Positions 8,396 through 53,520 of a stretch of 64,000 nucleotides of DNA are shown one piece after another. Under the pieces are notes generated by a model that was not told the origin of the DNA, searched no databases, and saw only the letters and a list, made by a program, of their open reading frames with translations. The position numbers and the translations under genes are program-made. Within the stretch, counting starts at the first letter, position 1. Every line of letters starts with the position of its first letter. Source of the DNA: Hypanus sabinus (taxonomy: Eukaryota); the NCBI RefSeq assembly GCF_030144855.1, contig NC_082712.1:49414001-49478000 (forward strand), written 5' to 3'.

Positions 8396-9044
8396 CACTG
8401 ACAATTAACGTTGAAATATCCATGCTTTGAACCTAAAGTTCAAGACATGTACCGTCTAGCAAAGAGCCAAAGCTGCATGACCTGAAGTTGCATGTCTTTG
8501 TGATGTTGCAGCTTTATTATAGTAAAAATCTAGGATTTTGGTGAAGATCCAATTGGTTTATGGGCTAGAGAAATAGAGTGCTATATAATACACAGCCAAC
8601 ACTTGAAATTTAACTTTAGTTGGGATGATTCTGGGAAAGATTACTTGAAAATTATGGAGCACAGTAAAACCACAGCTAAATTGGAAATGAAAGGGCCCAA
8701 TTTAAAATGGGCAGCATAAAACCCCATAAGGTGACCACAAATAATAATCTTCTGTTGCAATGTGCCTCCTCGGCATACATCTGGGAAAAGAAACAGGATA
8801 CGACATACATGTGGGATATGGTGTAAGCAACTGTTTTCGCCTTACTTGATGTAGTAACTTTGGATAAACAAAGACTTCATCTTTTCACATTCCCTCTTAC
8901 ATTGTATAGAATCTTTAGTTTTCCTTGTAGCGTAACTTATTTTCAATGGTAGCAGCATTTGTCCAGTCATCATCCTGCCCTCCCTCATTTATTAAAATAT
9001 TCCCTGTACTTCACACTTTCATTGCTTTTATTGTAAAACAATTG

Positions 9045-9540
9045 TCTTAGAGAAATACATAATGGAAATAGGCCCTTTGGCCCATTGCTTCCATGCTGAC
9101 CATCAACCATGCAATTACACCAAACCTACATTAAATCCACAATCTGTTCTCTCCACATTACTATCAGTGTCATCTCCAATTTCTACCTAAGTGACAATTT
9201 AGCGTGGGCAACTTAGATCTCTTAATTTTCCTCATCATGGCCTTTCACCTTATTGTCTGCCTGCGCTATGCTTTCCTATAACTGTAACACTATACGCTAC
9301 ATTTGTTACTGCTTTACCCTTGACATACCTCAATACAACCATGTGGTGAAATGACCTGTACTGATGGCACGCAAAACAACCTCTTTCATTGTACACCTAT
9401 ATATCTGACCATAATGACCTGAAGTTGCATGTCTTTGTGATGTTGCAGAAAACTGGAGTACCTGCAGGAAGCCTACACAGTCACAGGGAGGATGAGCAAA
9501 CTCCAAATATACAGTGCCCAAGGTCAGAATTGAGCTTCAT
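9045..9540 (-). mobile_element. HE1/V-SINE-like SINE interrupted by a plus-strand Rex1/Babar-type 3' tail (~9220-9413)
   Basis: CR1-type tail at 9045-9215 and V-domain at 9420-9540; the middle segment matches the tails at 11640-11870 and 20140-20345. Confidence 0.55.
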
Positions 9541-9779
9541 CGCTGAAGTTTTCTATAAGGGTTGGAATTTGATGATCTGTTGTTTGCTGAACTGACACAG
9601 CCCTGAAGCAAATATAATGGGAACCAGCTCACCTCCCCCACCATTTGTAGAAGGCACAACATGTCGAAGGCGCTACGATCATCATCTAAGACCACAATTT
9701 GCTAATTCAATACGAGCAAGCGCAAGATGTGTTTTAACACAAAATATATTCAGCTACTGAATGGTAGATATAGCTACTA

Positions 9780-10235
9780 GATACTGTACATCAGTGCTTG
9801 GTTTGGCAATTTCTCTGCCCAAGTCTGAAAAATATTGCAGAGAGTCATGAACGTAGCCTAGTCCATCATGAAGACCAGCTGTCTTCTAACTCTGTCGACA
9901 CTTCTCGCATCCTTGGCAAAGCAGGGCCACTGTCATCCCGTTGCACAGAAAATGCAAAAGCTTGAGAACGCATACCTTCAGGCTCAAGGACAGCTTCTCT
10001 CCCAGCATTATGAGATTCTGCAATGGGCACCATGTACAATAACGGTGAACACGTAGTTGCCCTAGCACTTTATTATTCTACCCGCAGTGCATTTCCTCCA
10101 TATCTGTAAACATTTATTTTGCATTCCATTTCCCTTTTTACTGCCTTGATATGCATGGAATGAATGCATGGAGAGGATGAAAACAAAAATTTTCCACAGG
10201 TATTTCAGTAGATGTGGCGATAATAAACCATTACA
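9780..10235 (+). mobile_element. Rex1/Babar-type LINE 3' fragment
   Basis: Coding remnant (gcagagagtcatgaacgtagcctagtccatcatg; caggctcaaggacagcttct) and 3' UTR ending taataaacca. Confidence 0.6.
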
Positions 10236-11469
10236 ATAACACTAATAAATATCACGGGTCACTAGTAAACTTGATGCAGGATAACCTTATAAAAAGTGAC
10301 TTGACAATCCACTTCTTATGAGTGGATTTTCTCATTTGGTTTGTCATCGTCATGATGATCTGTCAAAAGCTGTATTATTTTATCAATTTCAGTTAGACCC
10401 TCTGAAGTCTTGTGACATTTGTACTAGTGGCAAATGTTATTTAGAAGTAAGGAAAGAGAAGTGTTTTGAGTTGGGAAGCTGTTTATGATTAAGATACTAA
10501 AATTCTCCAACAATGACATGGGGCTTTGTGGATTTTGATTCCATCCATGACGAAAATAGAGCAAGTATCAAACTAAATTAAGATACTAATTCAAAATGCC
10601 TTTGACAACCAACCTTGGAATTGGTGGCATGAAATGTTAATAGTGATGTGGAAAGAACAGTTTCATTAAGATGGGTTCGATGTCTGTACTGTTTATAACA
10701 TAAGGAAGAAATTAAATTGAATGAGAGTGCATTAGACACTTCCAAATCTTTAAAGCAGATAAACATTATGAAACCACCCAAGGATAAAATTTAATCTAAA
10801 TAAATAGAAAATGAAAGGATGCCTGTAATATATCCATAACTACAAACACATAGCACAAAATTGTTTAATCAAATGTCAGAGCCTGCTTTTGAAAACATAA
10901 ATTTCCAAAAAACCTTAAATTATTACTTGCAGAATTATAAATACAAAGGTCTAAGAGGTGCACAGAAGTGATCAAATCTGAGATTGAAATTGAGTTCCAT
11001 CATTGAATCCAAAGAATTGAGAAATCTGCTGCAAATAATCTAATGAAACTTTAACAGCAGTTATATATCAGAGACAAAAAAAGATTCAGCTCCTCGGGGA
11101 AAACCTTTGGGAAACAAACAAAACAAATTGTGAATGAAAGTAATATCAAACTGACCGCATGTCATTACTGATTCCCAGCTCTCTTGCTTATCCTTTCTTT
11201 TATGTCACTTAACAAACTTTGACCCCGTTTGTAAATTTAAAAGAATTCTGAACATTTACAACCAGCTTTCTCCTGGTGCTGCTTGTGTGGATTAGATGTT
11301 AAACCATTAGGAGTGAGTTCGACTTTGGAGTGAAGTTGCAGCTTCTGTGGAAGAAGTGAGAAGTAAATTTATGAAAGATCTCATAGTGAATGCCTCAATT
11401 TTTGATTCAAGTACCTTACTCTCCTGGAATGAAATTATAACCTCTTTCATCGTAATTGTGACCTAATTT

Positions 11470-11870
11470 AAAGAAGCCAGCAGAATCAAAGACCCATTCC
11501 ACTCAGAAATTCTCTTGTCTCCCTGTTTTTCAACTGGGCAGAGGATACAAAAGCTTGAGAATACGTACCACTTGGCTCAACATCAGCTTCTATCACTTTG
11601 TTAAAAAGAATTTTGAATGGACGGTGTACATTGAAGATGAATCATTCACCTCACCATCTACAAACATGTGTACTTTGCCAAGGCCCTTGTGTTTTGTTGT
11701 TTGCTAGCACTGCACCTACTCTGTATCAATAACACTATGTTCTGCATTTTGTTATTGCTTTCCCTTGTACTAACTCAAAGCACGTGTTTTGAAAAGAGCT
11801 GTAAGGAAGGCCTGCAAAATTAAGTTTTTCACTGTATGTCAGTACATGTGAAAATAATAAAACAAAACCC
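11470..11870 (+). mobile_element. Rex1/Babar-type LINE 3' fragment
   Basis: gaagccagcagaatcaaagacccattccac...gggcagaggatacaaaagcttg; the 3' UTR matches 20140-20345. Confidence 0.65.
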
Positions 11871-12079
11871 AGTTACTTAATATCTAAACAGATTCATGGC
11901 TATTCAAACAAAATTGTTATTTTCCAAGAATATTATGATGTAAAATAGTGAAGAATCAGTCTTTTACCCAAACGTCACGATTTATAAAAAGGAAAGTAGT
12001 GTACACTATTACTAAAACATTATTTCTGAGATTCTAATTCTCATACATTTCCCATTAAAGGCTTGAGGAACAGATACTC

Positions 12080-12350
12080 TTCACTCTCCTCTCTCTTGTC
12101 CTCTAAGTTTCCTTCCTCTCCAGCCCTTTACTTTTCCCACCTTCCTGGCTTCACCTTGCACCTTATAGCCTTACCTCCTTCACCCCCTCCCCCGATCTTT
12201 TTATTCTAAAATCTTTCTCTTTTCTTTCCAGTTCTGATGAAGGGACTTGGCTTAAAACAATAACAGTTCCATTGCCTGATCTGCTGAGTTCCTCCAGCAT
12301 TTTGTGTGTGTTGCTCTGGATTTCCAGCATTTGCAGAACCTCTTCGGTTT
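12080..12350 (+). mobile_element. Penelope-like element 3' end / pLTR
   Basis: Pyrimidine-rich tail followed by ttctgatgaagggacttggc...gctgagttcctccagcattttgtgtgtg. Confidence 0.7.
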
Positions 12351-12779
12351 AGACTCTAAGCAGATCTGGCAATCCGACATTGTAAAATACTGTGGGCACG
12401 AGCAGCAGTAGAACTGCTGTATATTAATTAATATACCTTAATTTTATCCGATGCACATTTCTCTGGGATATCCAACCATTCCACAGTGCTGTTGGAAAGA
12501 TAATTTCATGATTTTCAAGGTGATGGAGGGGTTAGTGAGTCAGAGATGGCAGAATGAAATTCAACAGAAATGGCGGGAAGATCATGGTGCAGTGAATGGT
12601 TAGGCTGGATGAGACAAACAGAGCAGTGACGAGTCTGATGACAGGCCACAACATCATCCAACCAATCACATCTGTTAGCAACACAAAATCAGAAGCCAGC
12701 AAAATTTAACAGTGTGTGTGTATTTTATAAGCCTTAGATTAAATGCTTTGTTGAGAGGAACATTGTATTTTTGTTTGGT

Positions 12780-13925
12780 TCACTACCTGGTAACATGGTC
12801 TCGTAGAGAATTTCAATGTAAAACTCCCTACAGACAACAGGTGAACAGCTGGTGCAGGAAGCTACTGGAAAGGGACATTTGTAAAAGAGGTTAGTGTGGA
12901 CATCTTTAGGCCAGAGGTGGAGACAGAGAGATTGAGAAAGAAAAAAGAGGTGTCAGAAATTAATCAGATGAATAAGGGCAGGGTGGAGATTGGAGGAAAA
13001 GTTGATGAGCTCAGGGAGGATGCAGATTTCGATGCAGTGGAGCAAGAGTTGAGGTCATTACTAGTGTAGGCCTGGAACATGGACTGTGTGGTGAACTACA
13101 TATACCTGTCTGGACTTACCCCCCCCCCCCCGCTGACTGCACCTGTGGCTCCTCCCACAGACCCCGGTATAAAGGCAATTGAGGCCTGAGCCCAGCCCTC
13201 AGTCTCCAGGATGTAGCATGGTGGTCAATTGCTGCTTGTTCTTTCTTCCAGCCAATTAAAGTCGATATCTCGCCTCACGTCTCCGAGAGTTATTGATGGT
13301 GCATCAGACTGTTCCATGCAGTTTATGAAACACAGGCATAGGTGAATGTCTATGGGTCATTTAGCCTGCAGAAAGTGGGAAGAACTAAAAGAGAAATTAT
13401 TGAGCATACGCACCAGATGGGGGAGGATGATGATGGAGGAGAACTGGTAAGGTCTGCCTCCTGAAAGAAGCAGAGAGCTTTAAATCCTTCCTGATAAGGG
13501 ATGGAAGTGTACAGGGACTGATCAGCCCTAGGGAAAATAGGCAATTGGGGCGAGGAAACTGAAAGTTATTAAAATGTGTGGCGTGTCATGGACATAGGTA
13601 GGAAGAGACAGAATGAAAGGGGATAAAATGGAGTTAAGGTATGCATACATGTGTTCAGTGGGGCAGGAATAAGCTGAAACAATGGACAGTTAAGCTTGAG
13701 GATTTTGGGTAGGAGGTAGAAGTGAGCAGTGCGGGTGATGGGAACTGGGAGGTTGGTGACAGTAGATGGAAGATCTGCAAAGCCAGTGTGGCTGGAGGCA
13801 ATGGCCTGATGCATCTTAATGGGGTCCTTAGTGAGATAATAAGAAGAGGTATCTGAGAGCAGCTGCCTGGCCTCAGTAAGGCAGAGGTCAATCCACCACA
13901 CTACAACAGAGATGGAGTACACTCC
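12780..13925 (-). mobile_element. Penelope-like element reverse transcriptase fragment, interrupted by a solo LTR
   Basis: ORFs 13569-13922 (VVVWWIDLCLTEARQLLSDTSSY..RTAHFYLLPKI) and 13350-13544 (QSLYTSIPYQEGFKALCFF) are Penelope RT N-terminal motifs. Confidence 0.85.
13087..13306 (+). mobile_element. Solo LTR (220 bp)
   Basis: TG...CA termini; 5-bp TSD gactg at 13082-13086 and 13307-13311; internal TATAAA and ATTAAA. Confidence 0.92.
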
Positions 13926-14354
13926 ACAGACTTGATCTGAGAAGGTTCTCTTCCCAGAGCCTTCTTTTTGTGATAGACAACATGCTTGTCTGCAACCAAT
14001 TGGTATGTTTTTCTAGTTCGTACATATTGTACTTGTGTTTAGAAATCCTTTGTAGATCCATAATCTCTGTGAGAATTATTTCTCAAAATAAATGTGTTCC
14101 ATTTGAAACAACTGTGTTTTGTCTGCTTTGTTATCTGGAATTATCTCCTTCATGTTTGGTAGGGGCTTCCTTGCTTGAGGTAGAGATTATTGACAGCTAA
14201 ACCCCTTCAAAAAAGAGACTAGTTAAGTAAATTGGTCTTTGAATTATAGATTAAATTAGTATGATCCCGCTAAAGTGATGGCATTTATTTGGACCTATAA
14301 TGATAAGATTTAGTATTGGCACAAGTTTAGAATGGATATGCTCTGTATCACAAG

Positions 14355-21294: not shown

Positions 21295-22130
21295 CAGTTA
21301 AGATGGTGCTGAACTGCAGTCTCTGTCAAGGTCATGGCTCAGTCTTAATTAATTGTTAGGATCATAGGGATGGCTTTGGAGTCAAAGCGTGGAGTTATGG
21401 AGCAGGTTAGGGTTCAGGGATAGGGATGAGAGGGAATTAGAGGTCCAACTGGAATCTAGACCCCCATTCCATGCTCCGCATTTTGCGTTCGAAGGCTAGT
21501 GACATGGACGTGTGAGGAAGGACATCCATGGTCAGATGTTGGGTTGGTACACTAGGGAAAATGAGCGCTAACATTCCCTCACCATAGGTCAGCAAGTTGT
21601 TTTCAGGTTTGCAGTTGATTGAAGTTCCATTGGGGCAGGAGACATGAACACTGGTGATCCCCCTAGGTACACCAGTTAGAGAGACCAGAGTTTGGGCTCC
21701 TACCATTGGCCAATCCGTTATTCAAGGTATGGCATTTGCAGTCCTCATCCAGGATCCTCATTCGTCCTCAACTGTGAGTCCTAGGGTTGACATTGAAGAT
21801 CAAAGCCCAAAAATCGATATATTTGAAATCTAGAATTTGGGACCCAACGGCTGAAGCTCTGGATATGCAAGTCCACTGGGGAAATCAAAACGCCCTATGT
21901 CTGCAAATCCACGAGTCTACTGGAGGCTAACGGTTGGAGGNNNNNNNNNNNNNNNNNNNNNNNNNNNNNNNNNNNNNNNNNNNNNNNNNNNNNNNNNNNN
22001 NNNNNNNNNNNNNNNNNNNNNNNNNNNNNNNNNNNNNNNNNNNNNNNNNNNNNNNNNNNNNNNNNNNNNNGAAGCTTGTTTTGCTGCTGTTGATTAGTTG
22101 CTATTGTTCTGTGAACCTGGTGCACACCAT
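21295..22130 (+). mobile_element. Unclassified retroposon spanning the assembly gap
   Basis: Starts aagatggtgctgaa like the 17916-18715 element; GT-rich body. Confidence 0.35.
21941..22070. other. Assembly gap (130 N)
   Basis: Run of n characters. Confidence 1.
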
Positions 22131-29966: not shown

Positions 29967-30965
29967 ATAATTTTGTATACCATAAGACCATAAGTCAAGG
30001 AGCAGAAGTCAGCCATTCGGTCCATTGAGTCTGCTCCACCATTTTATCATGAGCTGATCCATTCTCCCATTTAGTCCCACTCCCCCACGTTCTCACCATA
30101 ACCTTTGATGCCCTGGCTACTCAGATACCTATTAATCTCTGCCTTAAATACATCCAATGATTTGACCTCCACTGCCACCCGTGGCAACAAATTCTACAGA
30201 TTCACCACCCTCCGGCTAAAAAAAAAAATTTCTTTGCATCTCTGTTCTGAATGGGCGCCCTTCAATCCTTAAGTCATACCCTCTCATACTAGACTCCCCC
30301 ACCATGGAAACAATTTTGCCACCTCCACTCTGCCCATGCCTTTCAACATTCGAAACGTTTCTATGAGGCCCCCCCTCAATTCTTCTAAACTCCAAGGAGT
30401 ACAGTCCAAGAGCGGCCAAACATTCCTCATATGTTAACTCTCAAATTCCCGGAATCATTCTAATAAATCTTCTCTGAACCCTCTCTAATGTCAGCATATT
30501 CTTTCTTAAATAAGGAGCCCAAAACTGCACACAGTACTCCAAGTGAGGTCTTACCAGTGCTTTATGGAGCCTCAACATCACATCCCTGCTCCTATACTCT
30601 ATTCCTCTAGAAATGAATGCCAACATTGCATTCGCCTTCTTCACCACCGACTCAACCTGGAGATTAACATTAAGGGTATCCTGCATGAGGACTACCGAAT
30701 CCTGTTGCATTTCAGAACTTTGAATTCTCTCCCCATTTAAATAATAGTCTGTCAATTTATTTCTTCTACCAAAGTGTATGACAATACACTTTCCAACATT
30801 GTATTTCATTTGCCACTTCTTTGCCCATTCCCCCAATCTATCCAAGTCTCCCTGCAGACTCTTCTGTTTCCTCAGCACTACCGGCCCATCCACCTATCTT
30901 TGTATCATCAGCAAACTTAGCCACAAAGCTATCTATTCCATAATCCAAATCGTTGATATACAACG

Positions 30966-31234: not shown

Positions 31235-32139
31235 ATGTGCAGCACCTTGTCAAAGGCCTTCTGAAAATCCAAATATACAACATCCACTGCATCTCCCTAG
31301 TTGAGACTACTTGTAATTTCCTTAAAAAATTGCAATAGGTTTGTCGGGCAGGATTTTCCTTAAAGGAACCATGATGAGTTCTGCCTATCTTGTCATATGC
31401 CTCCAGGTACTCCGTAACCTCAACCTTGACATCAACTCCAACAACTTCCCAACCACCGATGTCAAGCTAACAGGTCTATAATGTCCTTTTTGCTTCCTTT
31501 CCCCCTTCTTAAATAGCGGAGCGACATTTGCAGTCTTCCAGTCCTCCGGAACCATGCCAGAATCTATTGACTTTTGAAAGATCATTGCTAATGCCTCCAC
31601 AATCTCCACAGCTACTTCCTTCAGAACACGAGGGTGCATTCCATCTGGTCTGAGAGATTTATCTACTCTCAGACAATTCAGCTTCCTGAGTACTTTCTCT
31701 GTTGTAATTATGACTGCACATATTTCTCTTCCCTGACACCCTTGAATGTCTGGTATATTGCTGATGTCTTCCTCAGTGAAGACTGATGCAAAATACTCGT
31801 TCAGTTCCTCCGCCATCACCCTATCTCCTGTTACAATTTCTCCAGCATCATTTTCTATCAGTCCTATATCTACTCTCACTGGTCTTTTACTCTTTATATA
31901 CTTGAAAAAGCTTTTACTATCCTCTTTGATATTATTTGCTAGCTTCCTTTCATAGTTCATCATTTCCCTCTTAATGACCTTCTTAGTTTCCTTTTGTAAG
32001 CTTTTAAAAACTTCCCAATCCTCTATCTTCCCACTAATTTTTGCTTCTTTATATGCCCTCTCCTTTGCTTTTATTTTGGCTTTGACTTCTCTTGCCAGCC
32101 ACTGTTGCATCCTTTTTCCATTTGAAAATATCTTCTTTA

Positions 32140-32825
32140 TATGCCTCTATAAATTTTCCCTCATTCTCCTATGCTCCAGGGAATAAAGTCCTAACCCAAT
32201 CAAACTGTTGCTGTAACCTAGGTCCTCATGTCCTGGCAACATCTAGGTACATTTTCTTTGTGACCTTTCAGTCTTTCCTGTATGTAGGTGACCAGAACTG
32301 CAATCAATACTCTAAATTTGGTTTCACCAATGCCTTATACAACTTCAACACAAGATCCTAATTTCTTGACTCAATATCTAATTTATGAAGGGTAATGTGC
32401 CAAAAGCTGTCCTTATGAACCTATCTACCTGTAATGCTACTTTCAAGGAATTATGGATCTGTAATCTTAGGCACCACACACCTCAGTCTCCTGCTAATAA
32501 CTGTTTAAGTCTTACCCTGGTTTGACCTCCCAAAGTGCAATATCTTGTACCTGACTACATTAAATTACATTTGCAATTGTTTGGCCCACTTTACTAGTTG
32601 GTTCAAATCCCATTGCAAGCTTCGATAGCCTTCCTTACTTTTCACTGCATCTTAATGTTGGAGTCATCTGCAAATCTTCTGATCCAGTTTACCACCTTAT
32701 CATTTAAATCAATAATATAAATGAAAAATATCAACAGACCCAGCACCAATTCCTGCAGCACACAACTAGTCACAGGCCTCCAGTCAGAGACACCACATCT
32801 ACTACCACTCTCTGGCTTCTTCTGC
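32140..32825 (-). mobile_element. CR1 RT fragment
   Basis: SDWRPVTSCVLQELVLGLLIFFIYIIDL..RFADD within ORF 32642-33148. Confidence 0.8.
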
Positions 32826-37417: not shown

Positions 37418-38608
37418 CAAGTCAAGTCAAGTTAAGTTACTTTTTATTGTCATTTCAACCATAAACTGCTGGTACAGTACACAGTAAAAATGAAACAACG
37501 TTCCTCCAGACCCTGGTGCTACATGAAACAACACAAAAAACTACGCTAGACAATGTGAGACAACTCAAGGCTACACTAGGCTACGTAAAACAACACAAAA
37601 ATTACACTAGTCTACAGACCTACACAGGATTACATAATGTGCACAAAACAGTGCAGGGCAGTACAATAATTAATAAACAAGACAATAGGCACAGTCGAGG
37701 ACAGATTACAGTATAATAATAAATGATGTAGATGTTAGTCTAGACTTTGGGTATTGAGGAGTCTGATGCCTTGGGGGAAGAAACTGTTGCACAGTCTGGT
37801 CGTGAGAGCCCAAGTGCTTCTGTAACTTTTGCCAGATGGCAGGAGGGAGAAGAGTTTGTGTGAGGGGTGTGTGGGGTCCTTCACAATGCTTTTAGCTTTG
37901 TGGGTGCAGCATGTGGTGTAAATGTCTGTAATAGCGGGAAGAGAGACCCTGATGATCTTCTCAGCTGACCTCACTAACCGCTGCAGGGTCTTGCGATCCA
38001 AGATAGTGCATTTCCCGAACCAGGCAGTGATGCAGCTGCTCAGGATGCTCTCGATACATCCTCTGTAGAATGTGATGAGGATGGGGGGGTGGGAGATGGA
38101 CTTTTATCAGCCTTCGCAGAAAGTAGAGATGCTGTTGGGCTTTCTTGGCCATGGAGCTGGTGTTGAGGGACCAAGTGAGATTCTCTGTCAGGTGAACACC
38201 AAGAAATTTGGTGCTCTTAATGACCTCTACCAAGGAGCCGTCAATGTTCAGCGGAGAGTGGTCGCTCCGTGTCCTCCTGAAGTCAACCACCATCTCTTTT
38301 GTTTTGTTCACATTCAGAGACAGGTTGTTGGCTCTGCACCAGTCCGTTAGCCACTGCACTTCCTCTCTGTATGCTGACTCATCATTCTTGCTGATGAGAC
38401 CCACCACGGTCGTGTCATCTGCGAACTTGATGATGTGGTTCGAGCTGTATGTTGCAGCACAGTCGTGGGTCAGCAGAGTGAACAGCAGTGGACTGAGCAC
38501 ACAACCCTGGGGAGGCCCCGTGCTCAGTGAGATGGTGTTGGAGATGCTGCTCCCAATCCGGACTGACCGAGGTCTCCCAGTCAGGAAGTCTAGGATCCAG
38601 TTGCAGAG
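37418..38608 (-). mobile_element. Rex1/Babar-clade LINE, 5'-truncated, well-preserved RT
   Basis: ORF 37961-38620 [55 protein letters not shown]; (acttg)n tail. Confidence 0.95.
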
Positions 38609-38617
38609 TCCCATCAG

Positions 38618-38790
38618 CATAAGACCATTGACACAGGAGCAGAATTAAGCCACTTGGTCCATCAAGTCTATGCCGCTATTTCATCATGGGTGATCCATTT
38701 CCCCCTCAACCCCATTCTTCTGCCTTTTTCCTGTAACCTTTCATGCCTTGACTAATCAAGAACCTGTAAACCTCCGTCTGAAATGCATAT
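38618..38790 (-). mobile_element. CR1 3' tail
   Basis: cataagacc..aggagcagaattaagccac..ctgtaacctttcatgccttgactaatcaagaacct. Confidence 0.75.
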
Positions 38791-38996
38791 GATTGAAAAG
38801 TTGACTTGATTCATGCGGGAAGTGTGGCTTGGGGCAGTCCACAGTCTGTCTGTTTGGGAGCTGGGGTTTAATCAATCCTCGTCTGTCATCTCATCCACAG
38901 CCATTCCAACATAGGTGGCCATGAGTTGGCATCGCCTGATGGAGTTCTTGAAGCCCGCAGGTCTTCACACAGTGTCAGCGTGTTGATCCAGCTCGT

Positions 38997-41779
38997 GGAT
39001 TACTCTAATATATCTGAAAAATTAAATACACAGCTGTCCTCCCTGCTTAGCTATAAACTCCAATTCAATAAAGAGTGCATCTCAGCTATATACATAGTTT
39101 ATTATATAATCCAATTACTATATACCAATATCCGCAGCATAGTAAATTTTAAATTGTCCCATTCAGGTAAAAAATTTAATCTCTGTGGAGGATTTCTAAC
39201 TCATGTGGGATAACATCTTTCCTGTCAAGGGAGAGTCACTCTGCTTGGCAGGTGAGACTTGTGGCTGTGAAGCATTCACAGGTTCTGGAGCCTCCTCCGT
39301 GGTGATTGTAGGTGTTGATTCTGAAACTGCAGGAAGTGGTTCCGACAGCTCTGGTCACCTTTCCTCTCCTTTTCTCTCTCTGGATCTACTTCGATCCCTT
39401 TCTTTTTCTTTCTCACATTCCTTTTCTCTTTCACACCATTCTCTTTCACGTGCACATCCTTTCTCTCCATCTCTTCCTTCCTTTTTCTTCTTCTAGGCTT
39501 GGGAACGTGCACTTACTTCACTGGAGTATTCTCTTGTTAGTCCTTCTATTGCTCCCCTTGCGATCTGATCTCTCCTCTTAGTTTCCGTATCCACAACATC
39601 ATCTGATGAATCCCCTGTTTTGGTATCTCCATTGACTCCTTTCTTTTTGACCTTCTATTCATCCAGCTGGGCTTTGGTCTTTACATCTACTGTCACAAGC
39701 AACTTTTTGTCTCTCACTTGTGGTTCATGCAATAACCTTAATGCACACAGAGCAGATTCTGGTTCTTTATACTCACAAAAGGTGAATGCCTGCAACTTTC
39801 CTGATGCTCCTTGAACTGCCTTCCAGCTTTAAACCAAGCCACATGTCATAAGTAACTGCCTGAATAACATAACAAAAGCCTTTTCAGATATGTTGCCTAC
39901 AAAAATAGTTTCAGTCGGATTACTGCTTTTGTCACTTTTATGTTTCCTCTGAGCAGCATGTTCCTTCCTTGGTCCAATATGTTTTCCAACCCGAGGCACA
40001 GGTTGGCTCCAACATCTGTTTGTCCTCTGATGGGCAGCAGTTCATTATGTTTGGCATGGAGACAGTTGTGGTATCTTCCAAAACCTCCCTTAATTTGTTT
40101 CAATTGGTTTCATTGCAGGGGATGTGGCATGTAAATGGTGGATGGATCTGCAATCAAGTTGTAGTTGTCTCAGCTAGTCATATCCCCACAATGCTGGTCC
40201 TTTTGTTTATACCACATACAAGATCAATTTGCCTTGTTGATTGTTGTATTTCACTCTTACGAATGTCATTCCCAAAGGAGTTAACGTTTCTCCAATATAA
40301 GTTCTTATTTGGATATCTGCAGTCTTCAGTTTGGTACCTTTTAAATGCTGTTTTTACTCATTTTGTGGAGTGACTGAGACAGCTAAACCAGTGTCTAATT
40401 CATTTTAATTAATTTGCTGTTCACTTCTGGTGTAAGCTACATTGCTTGTCTATTATTAGTTTTCACACTGAAAATCTACACAGTCCCATGTCACTTTCAT
40501 CATTATCAGATTTTTCATCAACAGCATGCAGTTTAGTGCTCTTTTTGAATATGCAACTTGACTTTTTAGCTTTTTCTCTTCCCTTTGCAGTCTACTTATT
40601 TTTGTCTGCCTAATGTGCTCTTTGTATATGTCTTACTTCATTACATTTGTTGCAAGTTTCACCATTAAATCTGCATTTGATTGGTGTATGTGAGCCCCTG
40701 CCACAATGGTAACACAATTTGTTTGGCCAGGCTTGTTTCTATTTAAGTGATGCAATTTTATTCAGGCTAACTTTCATTCTTGACTCCAACTCAATTGCAT
40801 TTCTGCCTGCAGTTTCCATTGCAACAGTGATTTTCACTGTAAGTCGTGCTTCAGTTAGAAGCCTTCTTGAGTGCTTTCTTCTAAGATTTCACAAAGAAAA
40901 TGATCTATTAGTGTATCATTAAGCCCATCACCAAACTGACAATGCCGAAACAATTTCTTCAATTCAGAAATGGACTCTCTTTCTTTTTGATTCTGCTTAT
41001 GAAACCTAAAGCATTTTGCAATCAGCAATGGCTTTGTTACTGAATATTCCTTCATTACTTTGCAATACCACCAAAGCTCATTTCTGCTGGCTTGTTTGGA
41101 GCAGTCAAACTTCGAAGCAAACTGCATGTCTTTAAGCCTAATGCACTCAGCAAAATTGGTACTCAGTTCTCATTGGCTATTTTATTTGCTTCAAAATACT
41201 GTTCCAATAATTCAGAACACATGAGATAATTACCTGTTGTATAATCAGCAATCTTTCCAATGTAGCCAGCCATTTCTGATTTTTTTTGTGATTATGATCA
41301 CCTGGTACTCACACTTTATGAACCTAGAATCCTTCCATTTTCTTTAAAAAAAAACTTGATTGTGTCTTCTCTTCTGAAGAACACTTGTTTTTTACTTTAA
41401 ACTCACCCATCTCTACACGTGCTGGCTGTTTCTTTTTACTCATCATCACTCGCACTGCATTTTTATCTGAACCTCTTGCTGCACTCCTGCAGGTCAAATG
41501 TTGTCTTGGGTTCGTTGCAAAAACATCTTGTCACCGATGTTAAGTTTTGTAACTTCAAAACATTAAATTAATTCAAAGGAAGACAAGGAGTCTGAAATTC
41601 AAGTGTAACTTCATCTTTACTTAAAATAAGATGTGCATGTATCACTCGATAGTGTGATGCCACAAGCAATGGGCATATTTTTATATATAACCCATAATTA
41701 ATTATTTAAACCATCAAGAATGCTTAATCAACTAATACATACAAGATTACTTAAATATAACTGATATAGTAAACACACA
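38997..41779 (-). mobile_element. Gypsy/Ty3 LTR retrotransposon, non-autonomous, carrying a captured RBM25 fragment
   Basis: 5' LTR 41538-41779 (TG...CA); PBS-like tcggtgacaag at 41537-41527; gag from ATG 41273 (KPLLIAKCFRFHKQNQKE..HCQFGDGLND; two zinc-knuckle remnants ~40610-40720); protease LDTGLAVS ~40400-40375; pol tail PELSEPLPAV..RCYPT*VRNPPQRLN 39360-39175; PPT-like aagcagggagga ~39048-39037; ~36 bp of 3' LTR (39032-38997) similar to the 5' LTR start. Confidence 0.9.
39370..40015 (-). pseudogene. RBM25: Processed (intron-less) partial pseudogene of RNA-binding motif protein 25, embedded in the Gypsy element
   Basis: Manual minus-strand translation: VPRVGKHIGPRKEH..PTETIFVGNISEKAFVMLFRQLLMTCGLV*SWKAVQGASGKLQAFTFCEYKEPESALCALRLLHEPQVRDKKLLVTVDVKTKAQLDE*KVKKK..ETKRRDQIARGAIEGLTREYSSEVSARSQ..EKEKERDRSRSRE. 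This is collinear with the vertebrate RBM25 RRM and RE/RD region as I recall it. Stops at 39831-39829, 39657-39655 and 39495-39493. Confidence 0.92.
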
Positions 41780-44460
41780 ATACTTTCAGTTTCCCAAGCA
41801 CCTTCTCCCTTGTAATCGCAACTGCACTTAACTTCTGTCCCTTGATACTCTCAAACTTCAGTACACTGCTAATGAATACTGATGCAAGATATTTATTCAG
41901 TTTGTCCGCCATTTCTTTGACCCCACTACTACCTCTCCAGAGTCCTTTTCCAGCAGTCCAATATCTACCCTGGCCGCTCGTTTACCCTATATATCTAAAA
42001 AGAACTTTTGGTATCCTCTTTGATATTGTTGGCTAGCTTACCTTCATATTTCATCTTTCCCTCCCATGGCTTTTTTCATTGTCTTCTGTTGTTTTTTTAA
42101 ACAGTTCTCAATCCTCTAGCTCCCACAAATCATTGTTCTATTATATGCCCTCTCTTTTGTGCTTTGACTTCCCTTGTTAGCCACGATTGTGTCATTGTGT
42201 TTTTAAAATACAACTTCTTCTTTGGGATATATCTATTTTGCACCTTCTGAATTGTTCCCAGGCCCTCCAGCCATACTTGCTCTGTCATCATCTCCCTTCT
42301 AATCAAATTTGACTAGCTCTTCTCTCACGCCTCTGTAATTCCCTTTACTCTATTGTAATACTGATATATCTGACTTTTCCTTCTCCCTCTCAAGTTGCAG
42401 GATGAATTCTATCATGTTATGATCACTGTTTCCTGAGTGTTCCTTTATCTTAAGCTCCCTAATCAAATTTCGTTCATTACACAACACCCAATCCAGAGTA
42501 GCTTATTGCCTTATGGGCTCAGTCACAAGCTACTCTAAAAACCTATCCTGTAGGCATTCTAAAAGCTCTCTCTCCTGGATCCAGAACCAATTTGATTTTC
42601 CCATTCCACCTGTATATTAAAATCCCCCCGACTATCGTAACGTTGCCCTTTTGATGCTTTTCTATCTCCCAGTGTAATTTATAGCCCACATCTGGCTACT
42701 ATTCAGAGGCCTGTATATACAGTAACTACCATCAGGGTCTTTTTACTCTTGGAGTTTCTTAACTCTATCCACAAGGATTCTATAACTTCTAATTTTATGT
42801 CACTTCTTTTTAAAAATTTGATTTCACTTTTTACCAACAGAGCCATTCCATTCCCTCTGTTTACCTACCCGTCCTTTTGATACAATGTGAATCCTTGGAT
42901 GTCAAACTTCCAACTAGAATCTTGTTTCAGCCACAATGCAATGATGCCCACAGTGTCATACCTGCCAATCTTTAATGGTGTTACAAGATAATCTACTTTA
43001 TTCCATATACTGTGTGAATTTAAATATAACACCTTCAGTCCTGTATCAATTTTCAAGTTTGTCCCCTCTTACACTGTAACTCATACCACTGACTGCAATT
43101 TTGCATGTCCACGTGCCTGTCCTTCCTGACAGTCTCACTACACACTGCCTCTGCTTGTAAACCAGCAGCTCTATCCTCAGCCCTATCACTCCAAGTCCCA
43201 TCTCTCGACCAAGTTATTTTAAACCCTCCCCAACGGTTCCAGCAAACCTGATATTGGTTTCCCTCAGGTTCAGGTGTAATCTGCCCCTTTTGTACGGGTC
43301 CTACCTTCTCCAGAAGAGATCCCAATGACCCAGCAATTTGAAACTCTGAACCCTGCACCAGTTTCTCAGTCAGGCATTCATCTGTCAAATCATCCTATTC
43401 TCACCCTCACTGGTGCATGACACAGACAGCCATCCAGCAATTACTACCCTGGAGGTCCTGTTTTTCAGCTTTCTACCTAGCTTCTTAAATTCTCTCTTCA
43501 GGACCTGCTTACTTTTCTTACCTATGTCATTGGTACCAATATATGGATGCTCACCCTCCCCTTATTAATGTCAAGTACCCGATCTGAGATGTCCCTGACC
43601 CTGGCACCTGGGAAGCTTTGTATGACGTCTCTATCATGTCCACCGAGTTTTGTGTCTACTCCCCTAACTATGGAATTCCCTGTCACTCCTGCAGTTCTCT
43701 TCTCCCCCTTTCCCTTCTCAGCCTCGGAGCCAGACTGAACGCCAGAGCCTAGGTCACTGTGACTCCCCTCAGTAGATCGTCTCTCTGAGCAGTATCAAAA
43801 TGGTTTAATTATTAGTGAGGGGAAAAGCCACAAGGATACTGTGTATGGGCTGCCCATTTCCCTTTTCTCTCCTGACAGTCACTCATTTTCCTGCCTCCTG
43901 CAACCTAGGGGTAAGTACCCCCCGGAGCTCCTTTCTGGCATCTCCTCAGTTTCCCATATGAGCTGCAGGTCCAGTTCCTTAATGCATTCCCTGAGGAGCT
44001 GCAGCCTGGTGTGGATTTGGTTATCCGGGAGGCTGGCGGTAACCCAGAATTCTCACATCTTAAGTGGAGAACACTACACAGCCTCTGCTTTAACTTGTGC
44101 CAACAGACAGCGAATAAAGAATTAATAAGAAGAAACTTACCAGATGTGTACCTCACCCAAGCCTGATAAGCCTAAGCCTACCCACTCTAACACTTCTCCG
44201 GTCACATATGGCCTCTCCACTTGTCCCTGCCTTTTTCATTTGCCTTTGCTAATGCATGATGCCTTCTGCACTGTTTCAACTGCTTCCAAAATCTTGCAAA
44301 AGCTGCTTTATTTAACTATCTCACATCCCAACCTGCATGAGACCTCCTGCGTTGATTCGACTGTGACTGCTGAAATTCTGGGAAAGCTCCTTTATTTAAA
44401 TCTCTCACTCTCCGACCCACGTGAGGCTTCCTGTGTTGATTCGACTGTGACTGCACCAGC
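41780..44460 (-). mobile_element. CR1-clade LINE 5' half (5' UTR, ORF1, endonuclease, linker), cut by the Gypsy 5' LTR
   Basis: GLKVLYLNSHSIWNKVD..YDTVGIIALWL (ORF 42865-43056); ORF1 remnants at 43053-44156; similar to 22135-23830 and 31700-32130. Confidence 0.85.
44287..44454. repeat. Two imperfect tandem 84-bp units at the CR1 5' end
   Basis: aaagct(g/c)ctttatttaa..tctcac..tcctg(c/t)gttgattcgactgtgactgc occurs twice, 84 bp apart. Confidence 0.85.
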
Positions 44461-49377: not shown

Positions 49378-51780
49378 ATAAATTGAATTGACTTTATTAC
49401 TTATATCCTTCACATACATGAGTAAAAATCTTTACGTTATGTGTCCGTCAAATGTGCAAAGTAAAATTTATAGTAATTTGTATTAAATAGAATGTGCAAC
49501 AGGACAGTCAATATAACATAGAAATACAATTGTATCAGTGAAAATTAATCAGTCTCTGGCCTGGTGGAAGAAGCTGCCCTGGAGTCTGTTGGGCCAGGCT
49601 TTTATGCTGTGGTACCATTTTTTTGGATGGTAGCAAGTAGAACAGTTTGTGGTTGGGGTGACTCAGGTCCCCAATGATCATTCGGGCTTTCTTTAGACAC
49701 CTGCCTTTGTAAACATCCTGAATAGTGGGAAGTTCACAACCACAAATGTGCTGGGATGCCCGCACCACTCTCTGCAGAGTCCTGCGATTGAGGGAAGTAC
49801 AGTTCCCATACCAGGCAGTGATGCAGCCAGTCAGGATGCTCTCAATTGTGCCCCTGTAGAAAGTTCTTAGGATTTTGGGGCTCATACAAAACATCTTCAG
49901 CTGTCTGAGGTGAAAGAGACTCTGTTGTGCTTTTTTCACCACACAGCCAGTATATACAGACCATGTGAGATGTTCGGTGACATGTATGCCAAGGAATTTA
50001 AAGCTATTCACCCTCTCAACCCCAGATTCATTGTTGTCAATAGGGGTTAGCCTGTCTCCATTCCTCTTGTAGACCACAACCAGCTCCTTTGTTTTTGCGA
50101 CATTGAAGGAGAGGTTGTTTTCTTGACACCATTGTGTCAGGGTGATGACTGCTTTGTAAACTACCTTGTTAGTATTTGAGATCAGCCCAATCAGCAGATT
50201 TAATTAGCAGATTGGAGCTGTGGGTGGTGACACAGTCATGGGTATACAGAGAGTAAAGGAGGGGGTTAGGACACATCCTTGAGGGGCACCTGTGTTGAGG
50301 GTCAGAGGGGCAGAGGTGAGGGAGCCCGTTCTTACCACCTGCCGGCGATCTGACAGGAAGTCCAAGATCCCGCTGCACAAGGCAGGGTCAAGGCCGAGGT
50401 CTTTGAGCTTCTTGTTGAGCCTTGGTGGAACTATGGTGCTGAATGCTGAACTGTAGTCCAAGAACAGCATTCTCACATAAGCATCCTTCTTCTCCAGATG
50501 TGTAAGGATGGTGTGTAGAGCTGTGGCTATTGCATTATCTGTCAATTGAATGCATTGGTAGGTAAACTGTAGGGGGTCTAATGTGGATGATAGCATGTTG
50601 CAGATGCAGTCCTTGACCACCCTCTCAAAGTATTTGCTTATTATTGAGGTGAGTGTGACAGGACACCAGTCATTCAGACATGCTACCTTGGTCTTTTTAG
50701 ACACAGGGACAATGGCAGATGTTTTGAAGCAGGAGGGCACTCTACACTGGGAGATAGAGAGATTAAAAATGTCTGTAAGCGTACCTGCCAGTTGTGCCAT
50801 GCACTGTTGGAACTGATGATCTAGGGTTTCTGGTTTGGATAGACCCTGGCTGATTTTTGGGGGACAACATCCTTGATGCACTTCAAGATGAAGCTCGTGA
50901 CCCCTTCCATGAACTCAGAGACATCCTCATCATGAAAGACATTCCAGTTGACGTCATCAAAGCAGTCCTGAGACTGATTGGAGACTGATTGGTCAGACCA
51001 ACAGTGGACGGTTTTAACTATGGCTGCCTCTTGTTTAAGCTTCTGCTTGTACACCAGCAGAAGCAAGACGGTGGAGTGATCCGACTTTCTGACCAGCGGG
51101 CGGAGGGGCACTTTGTAAGTGTTGTGGAAGGGAGAGTAGCAGTGGTTGAATATGTTATCTCCCCTTGTGCTCACCTAGATATGTTGACAAAACTTCAGAG
51201 AGACTTTAGACAATGATGCTCTATTAAAGTCTCCAGCAATGATGCAGGCAGCCTCTACGTGTGCAGTCTCCAGGTCTTCTCCAGTTCCTTGAGGGCCAGG
51301 TCAGTATCAGCCTGGGGCGGAATGTACACCACTGTGATGGTAACAGACGTGAACTCCCTAAGCAGCCAGTAGGGTCTGCACAGCAGCACAAGGTACTCCA
51401 TATCCGGGGAACAAAACGATTTGAGGACATGCACATTCCGGGGGTCACACCAAGCATTATCGAACATGAAGCATACCCCACCTCCTTTACTCTTCCCAGA
51501 GAGGTTTTTTGACCTGTCTGCCAGAACAGGGAGAATCCAAAGGGCTCGATGGCATGATCCGGTACCTCCTCCATCAGCCAGGTCTCCACGAAGCACAAAA
51601 CATTATATTCCTTTGTTTCCCACTGATAGGAGATTCTGGTTCTCAATTCACACAGCTTGTTGTCCGGGGTCTGAACAGCAGCCAGGAGCATGCTAGGGAG
51701 TGGCAGCCGATTAGTACGGCATCTCAACCTCATCAGGCCGCTGGCCCTTCTCCCTTGCCTCCAACACCACTTCCAAGGTA
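49378..51780 (-). mobile_element. Near-full-length decayed Rex1/Babar-clade LINE (APE endonuclease and RT)
   Basis: [93 protein letters not shown] across frameshifted ORFs; (caatt)n tail. Confidence 0.93.
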
Positions 51781-52179: not shown

Positions 52180-53520
52180 CAAGTATATATGTGTTATCAT
52201 ATACTACCTTGAGATTTATTTCCTCACAGTCATTTACAGGAAAAATAAAGAAATACAATAGAATCTATGAGAAGCCATATATAAGCAAAGACTGACAAAC
52301 AATCAAAGTGCAAAAGACAAACTGTGCAAGTAAAAACAAACTATGATACTGAGAATGTGAGTCATAAAGAAAAATTGAAAATGAGTCTGTAGCTTATAGA
52401 ATCAGTTCAGAGTCATGGTGCGTGTATGCTGGTTCAGGAGCCTGATGGTTGTATGGTAATAACTGTCCCTGAACCTGGTGGTGTGGGACCTAAGCCTGAT
52501 GGTAGCAGTGAGAAGAGAGCATGACCTGGATGGTGGGGATCTTTGATGGTGCTTTCCTGTGGCCGCACTGCATGTAAATGTATTCAAAGGTGTGGGGGAG
52601 CTCTGCCTGTGACGGACAGCGCTGCATCCATCATTTTTGTAGTTTTTCCTGCTCATGTGGATTGCTGTTTCTAACTAGTCAGGGTATTATCCACCATACA
52701 TCTATAGAATGTTGTCAACATGTTTTGGTGACATGCCAAACTTACACAAACTTCTAAGAAAGTAGAGGCGGTGATAAGCCTTCTTTATGATTGCACTTTT
52801 ATTCCACAACAGATACTCTGATATGTTTGTGGCAAGGAATTTAAAGCTACCTTCACCCCTCATCTCCAATCCCCTGATGAGGACTGGCTCACAGACCTCC
52901 AGCTTCTTCCTCCTGCAGTTGATAATCAGCTCTTTGCTTTTGTTGATGCTGAGTGAGAGGCCATTGTTGTGGCACCACTCAGCCAGATTTTTAATCTCCC
53001 TCCTATATGCCAATTCATCAGCATCTTTGATCTGTCCAACAACAGTGGTGTCATCAACAAACTTAAATATGACATTGGTGCTGTCCTTAGCCACACATTC
53101 ATGGGTATAAATTAAGTAAAGCTGGGGATAACCACGCAGACTTGTGTTACAGCGATGCTGATGGTGAGTGTGGAGGAGATGCTGTTTCCAATCCATAGTA
53201 ACTGGGATCCGTCAGTAAGGAAATCAAGGATTTAGTTGCACAGGGAAGTATCAAGGCATGGGATTTCATGATTTTTCAAGGGGATGATAGTATTGAATGC
53301 TGTGCTGTTGTCAATGACAGCATCCCGATGTATGGATCTTCATTATCCCAGGTGTTCCCGAGCTGAGCGAGGAGCCAATGGAATGGCACCGGATGTTGAT
53401 CTGTCATGATGGTAGGCCAGTTGGAGTGGATCCAGGTCACGCCTCAGTCAGGAGTTGACATGTTTCATGAACAGCATCTCGAAGAACTTTATCACACTGG
53501 ATATACGTGTAAGCAAAGCA
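52180..53520 (-). mobile_element. Rex1/Babar-clade LINE, 5'-truncated
   Basis: ORF 52702-53196 YTHECVAK..FKFVDDTTVVG..AYRREIKNLAEWC..KKAYHRLYFLRSL. Confidence 0.88.

What the first reader, a model, noticed from the sequence alone, without database searches (positions are those of the whole stretch)
38997..41779. Gypsy LTR element whose RT/RNaseH/integrase core is replaced by a captured, spliced RBM25 mRNA fragment
Seen in sequence (minus strand): 5' LTR, PBS-like site, gag, protease and the start of the RT linker (HHLHATSP..LREVLEDTTTV, ending ~40060). Then ~650 bp translate to the RBM25 RRM and RE/RD region, followed by the Gypsy pol tail, PPT and a 3' LTR stub. The ORF track misses this because of three in-frame stops. 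There is no poly-A or TSD around the RBM25 part, and several kb of pol are missing exactly where it sits. Established: RBM25 is a multi-exon splicing regulator, and LTR elements and retroviruses can transduce co-packaged mRNAs by RT template switching. Inference: this is LTR-mediated retroposition of a host splicing-factor transcript, not an L1-made processed pseudogene. Because LTRs, PBS and PPT are the cis signals for mobilisation, the chimera may have spread as its own non-autonomous family.
Basis: partly seen in the sequence, partly recalled or inferred. Interest (0 to 1): 0.9.

Follow-up and report, generated by a model that had tools for sequence, protein, structure and literature searches.

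The report
Dead retrotransposon carrying captured RBM25 fragment
An old, decayed Gypsy-type jumping gene has had its enzyme genes replaced by an intron-free piece of the host splicing-factor gene RBM25, which is a clear but ordinary example of a gene-copying route already described in animals.

Summary
On the minus strand, 41779-38998 reads in this order:
- a terminal region starting TG
- gag with a CCHC knuckle
- an aspartic protease and the start of the protease-RT linker
- about 640-700 nt of RBM25 coding sequence (end of the N-terminal region, RRM, start of the Glu/Arg-rich region)
- a pol C-terminal tail
- a purine tract
- a 35-nt copy of the element's first bases (3' LTR stub)

The RBM25 part is the only RBM25-like sequence in the window. 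It aligns in one frame to RBM25 orthologues (E about 1e-69). It crosses at least four conserved exon junctions without introns and lacks one 84-nt exon. It has no poly-A and no 3' end of the mRNA. RT, RNase H and integrase are absent.

This is the architecture of LTR-mediated retroposition by template switching (Tan et al. 2016, PMC5131818), already reported for zebrafish, chicken, mouse and human. I therefore file it as a new member of a known kind.

The copy is dead: there are many stops and frame changes in gag and protease, three to four stops in the RBM25 part, and the 3' LTR is truncated. I found no second copy, so spread as a non-autonomous family is untested. Microsimilarity at the junctions, the PBS and the target-site duplication could not be tested.

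The parts
41538..41779 (-). Putative 5' LTR. It starts TGT at 41779 and may end ACA at 41538.
   Evidence: Homology of the upstream LINE fragment to a second copy in the window stops at about 41774-41785. The first 35 nt recur at 39032-38998. The 3' limit is read from the sequence only and is not corroborated.
41520..41537 (-).
   Evidence: Position only, directly after the putative LTR end. It was not tested: there is no tRNA gene in the window and no comparator was allowed from memory.
40613..41291 (-). gag, including the CCHC zinc knuckle at its 3' end. Broken by 2 frame changes and 3 in-frame stops.
   Evidence: blastx to P0277 (summed E 4.6e-38), P0288 and others. P0288 carries Pfam Retrotrans_gag and zf-CCHC.
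40099..40714 (-). CCHC-to-protease segment of pol (aspartic protease). Broken by 2 frame changes and 6 in-frame stops. It overlaps the gag part at the knuckle.
   Evidence: Homologous to the second ORF of L004 at about 47% identity. That ORF carries Pfam RVP at 25.9 bits (cut-off 20.7) and zf-CCHC. A 101-residue tblastx alignment covers 40401-40099.
40060..40098 (-). Start of the protease-RT linker, the last retroelement sequence before the captured part
   Evidence: Resembles the stretch that follows the protease in L001, L005 and L006. Judged by eye, no statistic.
39360..40057 (-). RBM25-derived, intron-free cDNA fragment, secure from 39999 to 39364. It covers the end of the N-terminal region, the RRM, the linker and the start of the Glu/Arg-rich region. 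It has 3 in-frame stops plus 1 at its 3' border, one exon-sized deletion and a few small ones.
   Evidence: The profile of 25 vertebrate RBM25 proteins matches at E 6e-18, 1.8e-31 and 3.5e-15 (profile positions 57-227) and weakly at 0.009 (positions 289-327).
39174..39348 (-). pol C-terminal tail (after integrase), with 1 frame change
   Evidence: tblastn of L006:11715-12044 against the whole window puts its two best, colinear hits here, summed E 0.033. In a local alignment, 15 of 1000 shuffles reached the observed score. The spacing to the LTR start (about 140 nt) is similar to that in L006 (about 135 nt).
39033..39047 (-). Purine-rich tract (PPT-like) directly upstream of the LTR stub
   Evidence: Read from the sequence. 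L006 has the same arrangement.
38998..39032 (-). 3' LTR stub: the first 35 nt of the LTR. The rest is missing.
   Evidence: 28/35 identical to 41779-41745. Score 21 against shuffles of 9.0 +/- 1.3 (0 of 2000 reached it); 0 of 266 control windows reached it.

Best explanation
This is a non-autonomous chimeric LTR element made by LTR-mediated retroposition.

While a Ty3/Gypsy-type element was being reverse transcribed in its particle, the RT had copied the 3' end of the element RNA: U3, the purine tract, the 3' untranslated stretch and the pol tail. It then switched to a co-packaged, spliced RBM25 mRNA inside the region coding for the Glu/Arg-rich part. It copied that mRNA towards its 5' end as far as the end of the N-terminal region, then switched back to the element RNA in the protease-RT linker. 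It finished through protease, gag and the primer site.

The resulting DNA had two LTRs and was integrated into a LINE copy. It has decayed since, and a later deletion or rearrangement removed most of the 3' LTR and the flank.

Shown: the order and orientation of the parts, the spliced origin of the RBM25 piece, the missing RT/RNase H/integrase, and the LTR start at both ends. Inferred: the two template switches, their direction, and co-packaging.
For: - Both flanks of the RBM25 piece are parts of an LTR element, in the right order and on the same strand.
- The RBM25 piece is colinear with RBM25 proteins in one frame.
- It contains no insert at the Amia exon junctions 49|50, 68|69, 122|123 and 183|212, which all have canonical GT-AG introns in L003. 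Single-exon ORFs from many vertebrate genomes stop at the same bounds.
- There is no poly-A, no mRNA 3' end and no other RBM25 exon in the window.
- The U3 start is duplicated after a purine tract.
- Decay is of the same order in both parts. In the RBM25 part, 13 of 76 columns invariant among orthologues are changed, implying about 8% nucleotide divergence. The LTR pair gives about 12% per lineage, from 35 nt only.
Against: - Only one decayed copy is available.
- The parent element and the host's own RBM25 mRNA were not available, so microsimilarity at the two junctions could not be examined.
- The pol-tail match is modest (E 0.033) and the LTR match is only 35 nt.
- The PBS and the target-site duplication are untested.
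- The Gypsy-side end of junction 1 rests on a by-eye comparison. The first 60 nt or so of the RBM25 part are not statistically supported.
- A DNA-level origin after integration cannot be excluded from one copy.
Confidence: 0.7

Rival explanations
1. DNA-level origin after integration. A complete Gypsy copy suffered a break or large deletion in pol, and the gap was repaired with a free RBM25 cDNA fragment as filler.
For: It would give the same final anatomy: an intron-free, doubly truncated RBM25 piece without poly-A between the protease linker and the pol tail. The locus shows other rearrangement. The 3' LTR and the rest of the interrupted LINE are missing.
Against: It needs a several-kb deletion, capture of a cDNA, and the same orientation by chance. 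Both junctions look in-frame locally (frames), which is easier to reconcile with one RT product but could also be chance (about 1 in 9). The template-switch route is documented many times with exactly this anatomy.
Confidence: 0.12
2. Two independent events. A LINE-made processed RBM25 pseudogene inserted into the pol of an integrated Gypsy copy, and later deletions removed pol, the poly-A tail and the mRNA 3' end.
For: LINE fragments with reverse transcriptase are abundant around the locus, so LINE enzymes were active in this genome.
Against: There is no poly-A, no target-site duplication and no 3' end of the mRNA. LINE-made copies normally keep the 3' end and lose the 5' end. No trace of RT, RNase H or integrase remains on either side. 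This route needs at least three events with breakpoints that leave clean junctions.
Confidence: 0.07
3. Assembly artefact: unrelated repeats joined wrongly at one or both junctions.
For: The region is repeat-rich, and the window contains an assembly gap at 21941-22070.
Against: The parts are in the biologically expected order, on the same strand, with similar decay. The gap is 17 kb away. An RBM25 cDNA has no reason to be in a genome assembly unless it is integrated.
Confidence: 0.03
4. DNA-level duplication of part of the RBM25 gene, or the host gene itself.
For: None beyond the sequence similarity.
Against: There are no introns at four conserved junctions. There is no other RBM25 exon and no PWI domain in the 64 kb. 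The piece has in-frame stops and retroelement sequence on both sides.
Confidence: 0.01

Closest known systems
LTR-mediated retrocopies of metazoans (Tan et al. 2016, Genome Res 26:1663, PMC5131818)
   Same: An internal, partial, intron-free retrocopy flanked by discontinuous parts of one LTR retrotransposon. Part of the internal ORFs is replaced. There is no poly-A and no target-site duplication around the retrocopy. The paper notes that such chimeras can behave as non-autonomous elements.
   Different: Those cases are young and often polymorphic, with microsimilarity shown at the fusion points. This one is old and decayed, its 3' LTR is truncated, and microsimilarity could not be examined. 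The parental gene (RBM25) did not appear in the passages of that paper that I read; I did not check its full list of retrocopies.
Bs1 of maize and gene fragments inside rice LTR elements (as cited in PMC5131818)
   Same: An LTR element whose interior carries exonic fragments of cellular genes. Bs1 copies share switch points, which shows secondary spread.
   Different: These are plant elements, and Bs1 combines three genes. Here there is one gene, one copy, and no evidence of spread.
FAM8A1 captured by HERV-K in human (as cited in PMC5131818)
   Same: A vertebrate LTR element carrying a captured cellular mRNA fragment.
   Different: The carrier is an endogenous retrovirus, not a Gypsy-type element.
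Transduction of cellular genes by retroviruses
   Same: A cellular spliced sequence replaces part of gag-pol-env, giving a replication-defective genome that depends on helper functions. RT template switching forms at least one junction (established knowledge, also summarised).
   Different: There is no evidence here of a read-through transcript, of selection for the captured gene, or of any biological effect. The carrier is a retrotransposon without env.
LINE-made processed pseudogenes
   Same: An intron-free copy of a spliced mRNA, decayed by stops.
   Different: There is no poly-A, no target-site duplication and no mRNA 3' end, and the piece is embedded in an LTR element.

Membership tests
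Ty3/Gypsy-type LTR retrotransposon | Long terminal repeats in direct orientation, starting TG and ending CA | tested here: inconclusive
   The first 35 nt recur after the purine tract (28/35; 0 of 2000 shuffles and 0 of 266 control windows reached the score). The rest of the 3' LTR is missing, so the length and the end of the LTR are not established.
Ty3/Gypsy-type LTR retrotransposon | gag with capsid-type domain and CCHC zinc knuckle | tested here: met
   Homology to P0277 and P0288. P0288 scores above the Pfam cut-offs for Retrotrans_gag and zf-CCHC. The window's own short pieces are below threshold on their own.
Ty3/Gypsy-type LTR retrotransposon | Retroviral-type aspartic protease after gag | tested here: met
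   40714-40105 is homologous to the second ORF of L004, which scores 25.9 bits for Pfam RVP (cut-off 20.7).
Ty3/Gypsy-type LTR retrotransposon | pol order protease - RT - RNase H - integrase (integrase last, unlike Copia) | tested here: inconclusive
   RT, RNase H and integrase are absent from this copy. The relative L006 has gag, then RVT_1 (weak), then RT_RNaseH (weak), then rve. This excludes a Copia order for the family. It does not separate Gypsy from retrovirus-like or BEL/Pao by phylogeny.
Ty3/Gypsy-type LTR retrotransposon | Primer binding site complementary to a tRNA 3' end | not tested
   There is no tRNA gene in the window, and no comparator sequence was available from a tool.
Ty3/Gypsy-type LTR retrotransposon | Polypurine tract directly upstream of the 3' LTR | tested here: met
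   A purine-rich tract at about 39047-39033 abuts the LTR stub. L006 has the same layout.
Ty3/Gypsy-type LTR retrotransposon | Target-site duplication flanking the element | not testable with these tools
   The 3' end of the element is truncated, and the interrupted LINE does not resume downstream.
LTR-mediated retrocopy (template-switch chimera) | Retrocopy flanked on both sides by discontinuous parts of one LTR element, same orientation, with internal ORF sequence replaced | tested here: met
   The protease linker lies on one side; the pol tail, purine tract and LTR start lie on the other. No RT, RNase H or integrase is present.
LTR-mediated retrocopy (template-switch chimera) | Captured sequence derives from spliced mRNA (crosses exon junctions) | tested here: met
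   Four junctions of the Amia gene (L003) are crossed without an insert, and one 84-nt exon is absent. The same exon bounds appear in single-exon ORFs of many vertebrates.
LTR-mediated retrocopy (template-switch chimera) | Partial mRNA, no poly-A, no target-site duplication around the retrocopy | tested here: met
   The piece covers roughly residues 65/83 to 345 of an 836-residue orthologue. No A-run or direct repeat is seen at its borders.
LTR-mediated retrocopy (template-switch chimera) | Microsimilarity between mRNA and element at the fusion points | not testable with these tools
   This needs the host's RBM25 mRNA and a close, less decayed family member. Neither could be fetched.
LINE-made processed pseudogene | 3' end of the mRNA with poly-A tail, flanked by target-site duplication | tested here: not met
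   The RBM25 piece ends in the Glu/Arg-rich region and abuts the pol tail within about 16 nt. No A-run is present.
RBM25 (source of the captured part) | RRM followed by a Glu/Arg-rich region and a C-terminal PWI domain, with best hits named RBM25 | tested here: met
   The best library hits are RNA-binding protein 25 with RRM_1 and PWI. The fragment itself holds the RRM and the start of the Glu/Arg-rich region only. There is no PWI anywhere in the window.

The most novel reading that the evidence does not exclude
The chimera was born as one continuous reading frame: gag, protease, the RBM25 RRM with its Glu/Arg-rich piece, and the pol tail. Both junctions look in-frame locally. It then amplified as a non-autonomous family whose fusion protein carried a host splicing-factor RNA-binding domain, so a retroelement would have borrowed an RRM for its own RNA handling. 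The present copy would be one dead member.
Probability: 0.06. Interest if true: 0.6.

Novelty: new member of a known kind. Interest (0 to 1): 0.3.

Why it matters
It adds a well-resolved example of LTR-mediated gene capture in a vertebrate genome whose LINEs are not of the mammalian L1 type. All landmarks are still readable despite its age. It shows that such chimeras can be recognised from raw sequence. It also marks a place where annotation could mislabel a pseudogene fragment as an RBM25-like gene or miss it altogether. If sister copies with the same junctions exist, it would document secondary spread of a gene-carrying non-autonomous element in vertebrates, which is rarely shown. As a single dead copy it has no evident function.

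Tried and rejected
- **LTR search.** Generic repeat finding and blastn-short between the two ends found no LTR pair. A local alignment seeded on the first 60 nt found the 35-nt stub. No further piece of the LTR exists elsewhere in the window.
- **Pfam on the window's own pieces.** Only sub-threshold RRM_1 and zf-CCHC hits. Classification had to go through relatives.
- **PDB sequence search.** No RBM25 RRM, no gag and no tail match. The PPR hits are spurious.
- **Tail piece 39199-39354 as part of RBM25.** Weak hits fell in the Ser/Pro-rich part of RBM25. They were not significant in the profile search (E 2.1) or in shuffle tests, so I rejected this in favour of the pol tail.
- **Extending RBM25 homology upstream of 39999.** Not significant. 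I kept it only as 'possible'.
- **Exact look-ups of three window ORFs.** None is on record, so the host genome's repeats seem not to be in the collection. The host species was not identified.
- **First gag search.** One hit only.
- **P0186 look-up.** Failed because it is an isoform; Amia P0271 worked.
- **L004.** This contig turns into bacterial genes after the protease, so it gave no pol.
- **Skipped-exon isoform.** None of 123 RBM25 orthologues or isoforms lacks the 84-nt exon. The exon-skipping reading is therefore only suggested by the gap starting exactly at the exon boundary.
- **Rfam and tRNA scans of the region.** Nothing found.
Full report
**What is there.** I read 38500-42300 on the minus strand and translated it in three frames. 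From 41779 downwards the sequence contains, in order:
- an A+T-rich terminal region that starts TG
- a gag-like reading frame with a CCHC knuckle
- an aspartic-protease-like stretch
- a stretch that translates to an RRM and a Glu/Arg-rich run
- a Ser/Thr/Pro-rich stretch
- an A+T-rich stretch
- a purine tract
- a short terminal piece ending at 38998

All of it is on one strand, and all of it is broken by stops and frame changes.

**The retroelement half.** The window's own pieces are too short and too decayed for Pfam, so I went through relatives.
- A 104-residue gag piece found P0157. P0157 found 53 relatives, several with precomputed Retrotrans_gag and zf-CCHC.
- blastx of 41800-40000 against these gives colinear matches from 41291 to about 40613 (P0277, summed E 4.6e-38).
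- I fetched the DNA of three relatives. tblastx shows colinearity from gag through the protease down to 40099 (L004 summed E 3.8e-86, L006 2.3e-40).
- The second ORF of L004 scores above the Pfam cut-off for RVP and carries zf-CCHC. P0288 scores above the cut-off for Retrotrans_gag. L006 continues with RVT_1 (weak), RT_RNaseH (weak) and rve, and it has its own 175-nt LTR pair and a purine tract.
- The family therefore has the order gag - protease - RT - RNase H - integrase, that is Ty3/Gypsy-like or retrovirus-like, not Copia.
- After the protease, the window still resembles the first residues of the protease-RT linker of L001, L005 and L006 up to about 40060 (by eye).
- Break counts against L004 and P0277: gag has 2 frame changes and 3 in-frame stops. 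The CCHC-protease segment has 2 frame changes and 6 in-frame stops.

**The RBM25 half.**
- A 57-residue piece searched against 1.84 billion representatives gave 270 hits. The best reached 81% identity, E 4.5e-20.
- Named members are RNA-binding protein 25 with RRM_1 and PWI.
- Three consecutive pieces map colinearly on these proteins, each separated by one residue position.
- A profile of 25 vertebrate RBM25 proteins matches them at E 6e-18, 1.8e-31 and 3.5e-15 (profile positions 57-227). It matches the next piece only weakly (0.009, Glu/Arg-rich).
- blastx gives a single one-frame alignment, 39999-39364, to gar P0186 residues 83-345 (E 1.7e-69) and Amia P0271 residues 2-256 (E 8.9e-70).
- Nothing else in the 64 kb resembles RBM25, so this is not the host gene.

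**Spliced origin.**
- I fetched the Amia calva RBM25 locus (L003) and mapped its exons exactly. The junctions after residues 49, 68, 122, 183 and 211 all have GT-AG introns of 160 to 4900 nt.
- The window has no insertion at any of them.
- Independently, dozens of single-exon ORFs from genomic contigs of many vertebrates begin and end at the same two bounds of the RRM exon.
- The only large gap in the window's copy starts exactly at the first residue of the 84-nt exon (residues 184-211). It ends four residues beyond that exon, in low-complexity sequence.
- This suggests a transcript that skipped that exon. However, none of 123 orthologues or isoforms lacks it, so a later deletion is equally possible.
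- A fifth junction may be crossed near the 5' end, but the first 60 nt or so (40057-40000) are not statistically supported.
- The fragment has three in-frame stops plus one at its 3' border, and no frame change in the secure part.
- There is no A-run at either border, and the mRNA's 3' two-thirds (including PWI) are absent.

**The 3' end.**
- I first suspected that the Ser/Thr/Pro-rich stretch was a further piece of RBM25. The profile and shuffle tests do not support that.
- Instead, the pol C-terminal ORF of L006, which ends about 135 nt before that element's purine tract and 3' LTR, finds its two best hits of the whole window at 39348-39226 and 39224-39174. They are colinear, with summed E 0.033. 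In a local alignment, 15 of 1000 shuffles reached the observed score.
- About 140 nt further on lies a purine-rich tract. Directly after it comes a 35-nt stretch (39032-38998) that is 28/35 identical to the very first 35 nt of the element (41779-41745). No shuffle of 2000 and no control window of 266 reached its score.
- My earlier repeat searches had missed it.
- The rest of the 3' LTR is not in the window.

**Surroundings.**
- Upstream, 41785-42184 is a LINE fragment homologous to a second copy at 31677-32102. That homology stops at the element's first bases.
- The LINE does not resume downstream, so the target-site duplication cannot be read.
- Downstream lie about 200 nt of unknown origin, a short repeat also present at 29981-30162, and a LINE RT fragment (RVT_1, 52.6 bits).
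- The whole window is rich in LINE fragments.

**How it most likely arose.**
- The anatomy is a partial, spliced mRNA in the same orientation between two non-adjacent parts of one LTR element. RT, RNase H and integrase are missing, there is no poly-A, and the U3 start is present at both ends.
- This is the signature of LTR-mediated retroposition by two template switches inside the particle, as described by Tan et al. 2016 (PMC5131818).
- The duplicated U3 start matters. An element RNA begins in R, so a LINE copying a chimeric RNA could not produce it.
- Decay is of the same order in both halves, which fits one old event.
- Both junctions look in-frame locally. The linker and the first RBM25 residues share a frame, and the Glu/Arg-rich part and the tail share a frame. 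Chance would give that about once in nine, and later indels blur it.
- I put 0.7 on this explanation.
- The main rival is capture of an RBM25 cDNA fragment during repair of a break in an already integrated copy (0.12). Next come an independent LINE-made insertion followed by deletions (0.07) and misassembly (0.03). DNA-level duplication of the gene is refuted.

**Novelty.**
- The mechanism and this architecture are published for several animals, including fish, birds and mammals. This is a new member of a known kind, well preserved in layout but dead.
- I found no sign of sister copies: none in the window, none on record for three tried window ORFs, two of them from the chimera, and none among the protein hits.
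- The collections at hand evidently do not hold this genome's repeats, so the family question stays open.

- To obtain references for searching the pieces apart, my scripts printed three-frame translations and the coordinates of stop-free segments. Note 1 lists the bounds of five such pieces. Piece bounds were also used as references in tool calls.
This report gives only counts and outer bounds.

Noticed in passing
window 39174-40098 (minus strand): Both fusion points look in-frame locally. The protease linker and the first RBM25-like residues share a frame, and the Glu/Arg-rich end of the RBM25 piece and the first part of the pol tail share a frame. The newborn chimera may have been one continuous ORF. 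Chance alone would give this about 1 time in 9.
   Followed up: partly
window 39360-39500 against L003 4638-4721: The RBM25 copy lacks the 84-nt exon (Amia residues 184-211), and the gap starts exactly at the exon boundary. None of 123 orthologues or isoforms lacks this exon. This is either a rare skipped-exon transcript or a coincidental deletion.
   Followed up: partly
window 41785-42184 and 31400-32156: Two copies (about 70% identical) of the 5' part of one LINE family's ORF2. The copy at 41785-42184 is cut off by the element, and its 3' part is not found downstream.
   Followed up: partly
window 38618-38794 and 29981-30162: A repeat of about 180 nt (72% identical) occurs in both places, in the same orientation relative to the LINE copies. 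It may be a SINE-like unit or a LINE tail.
   Followed up: no
window 37961-38620, 49535-50077, 52702-53196 (minus strand): LINE reverse-transcriptase ORFs whose C-terminal part hits Pfam ALKBH8_N (PF09004) at 24-45 bits, next to RVT_1. That Pfam family apparently also matches a LINE-derived segment.
   Followed up: no
window 38795-38997: About 200 nt between the truncated 3' LTR stub and the next repeat. It has no match in the window and none to anything I tried. Its origin is unknown, and it marks the breakpoint that removed the rest of the LTR.
   Followed up: no
L004 (GCA_027494445.1, JAKSHD010003315.1) 9001-14167: In this public contig, a retroelement gag-protease is followed directly by bacterial-type genes (DUF3801, DUF4240, T4SS-DNA_transf). 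It looks like a chimeric or contaminated assembly contig.
   Followed up: no
window 44253-44454: Two adjacent, partly overlapping units of about 120 nt, 75% identical. This is a short tandem duplication inside the upstream LINE region.
   Followed up: no
window 21941-22070: A run of 130 N (assembly gap or masked stretch).
   Followed up: no
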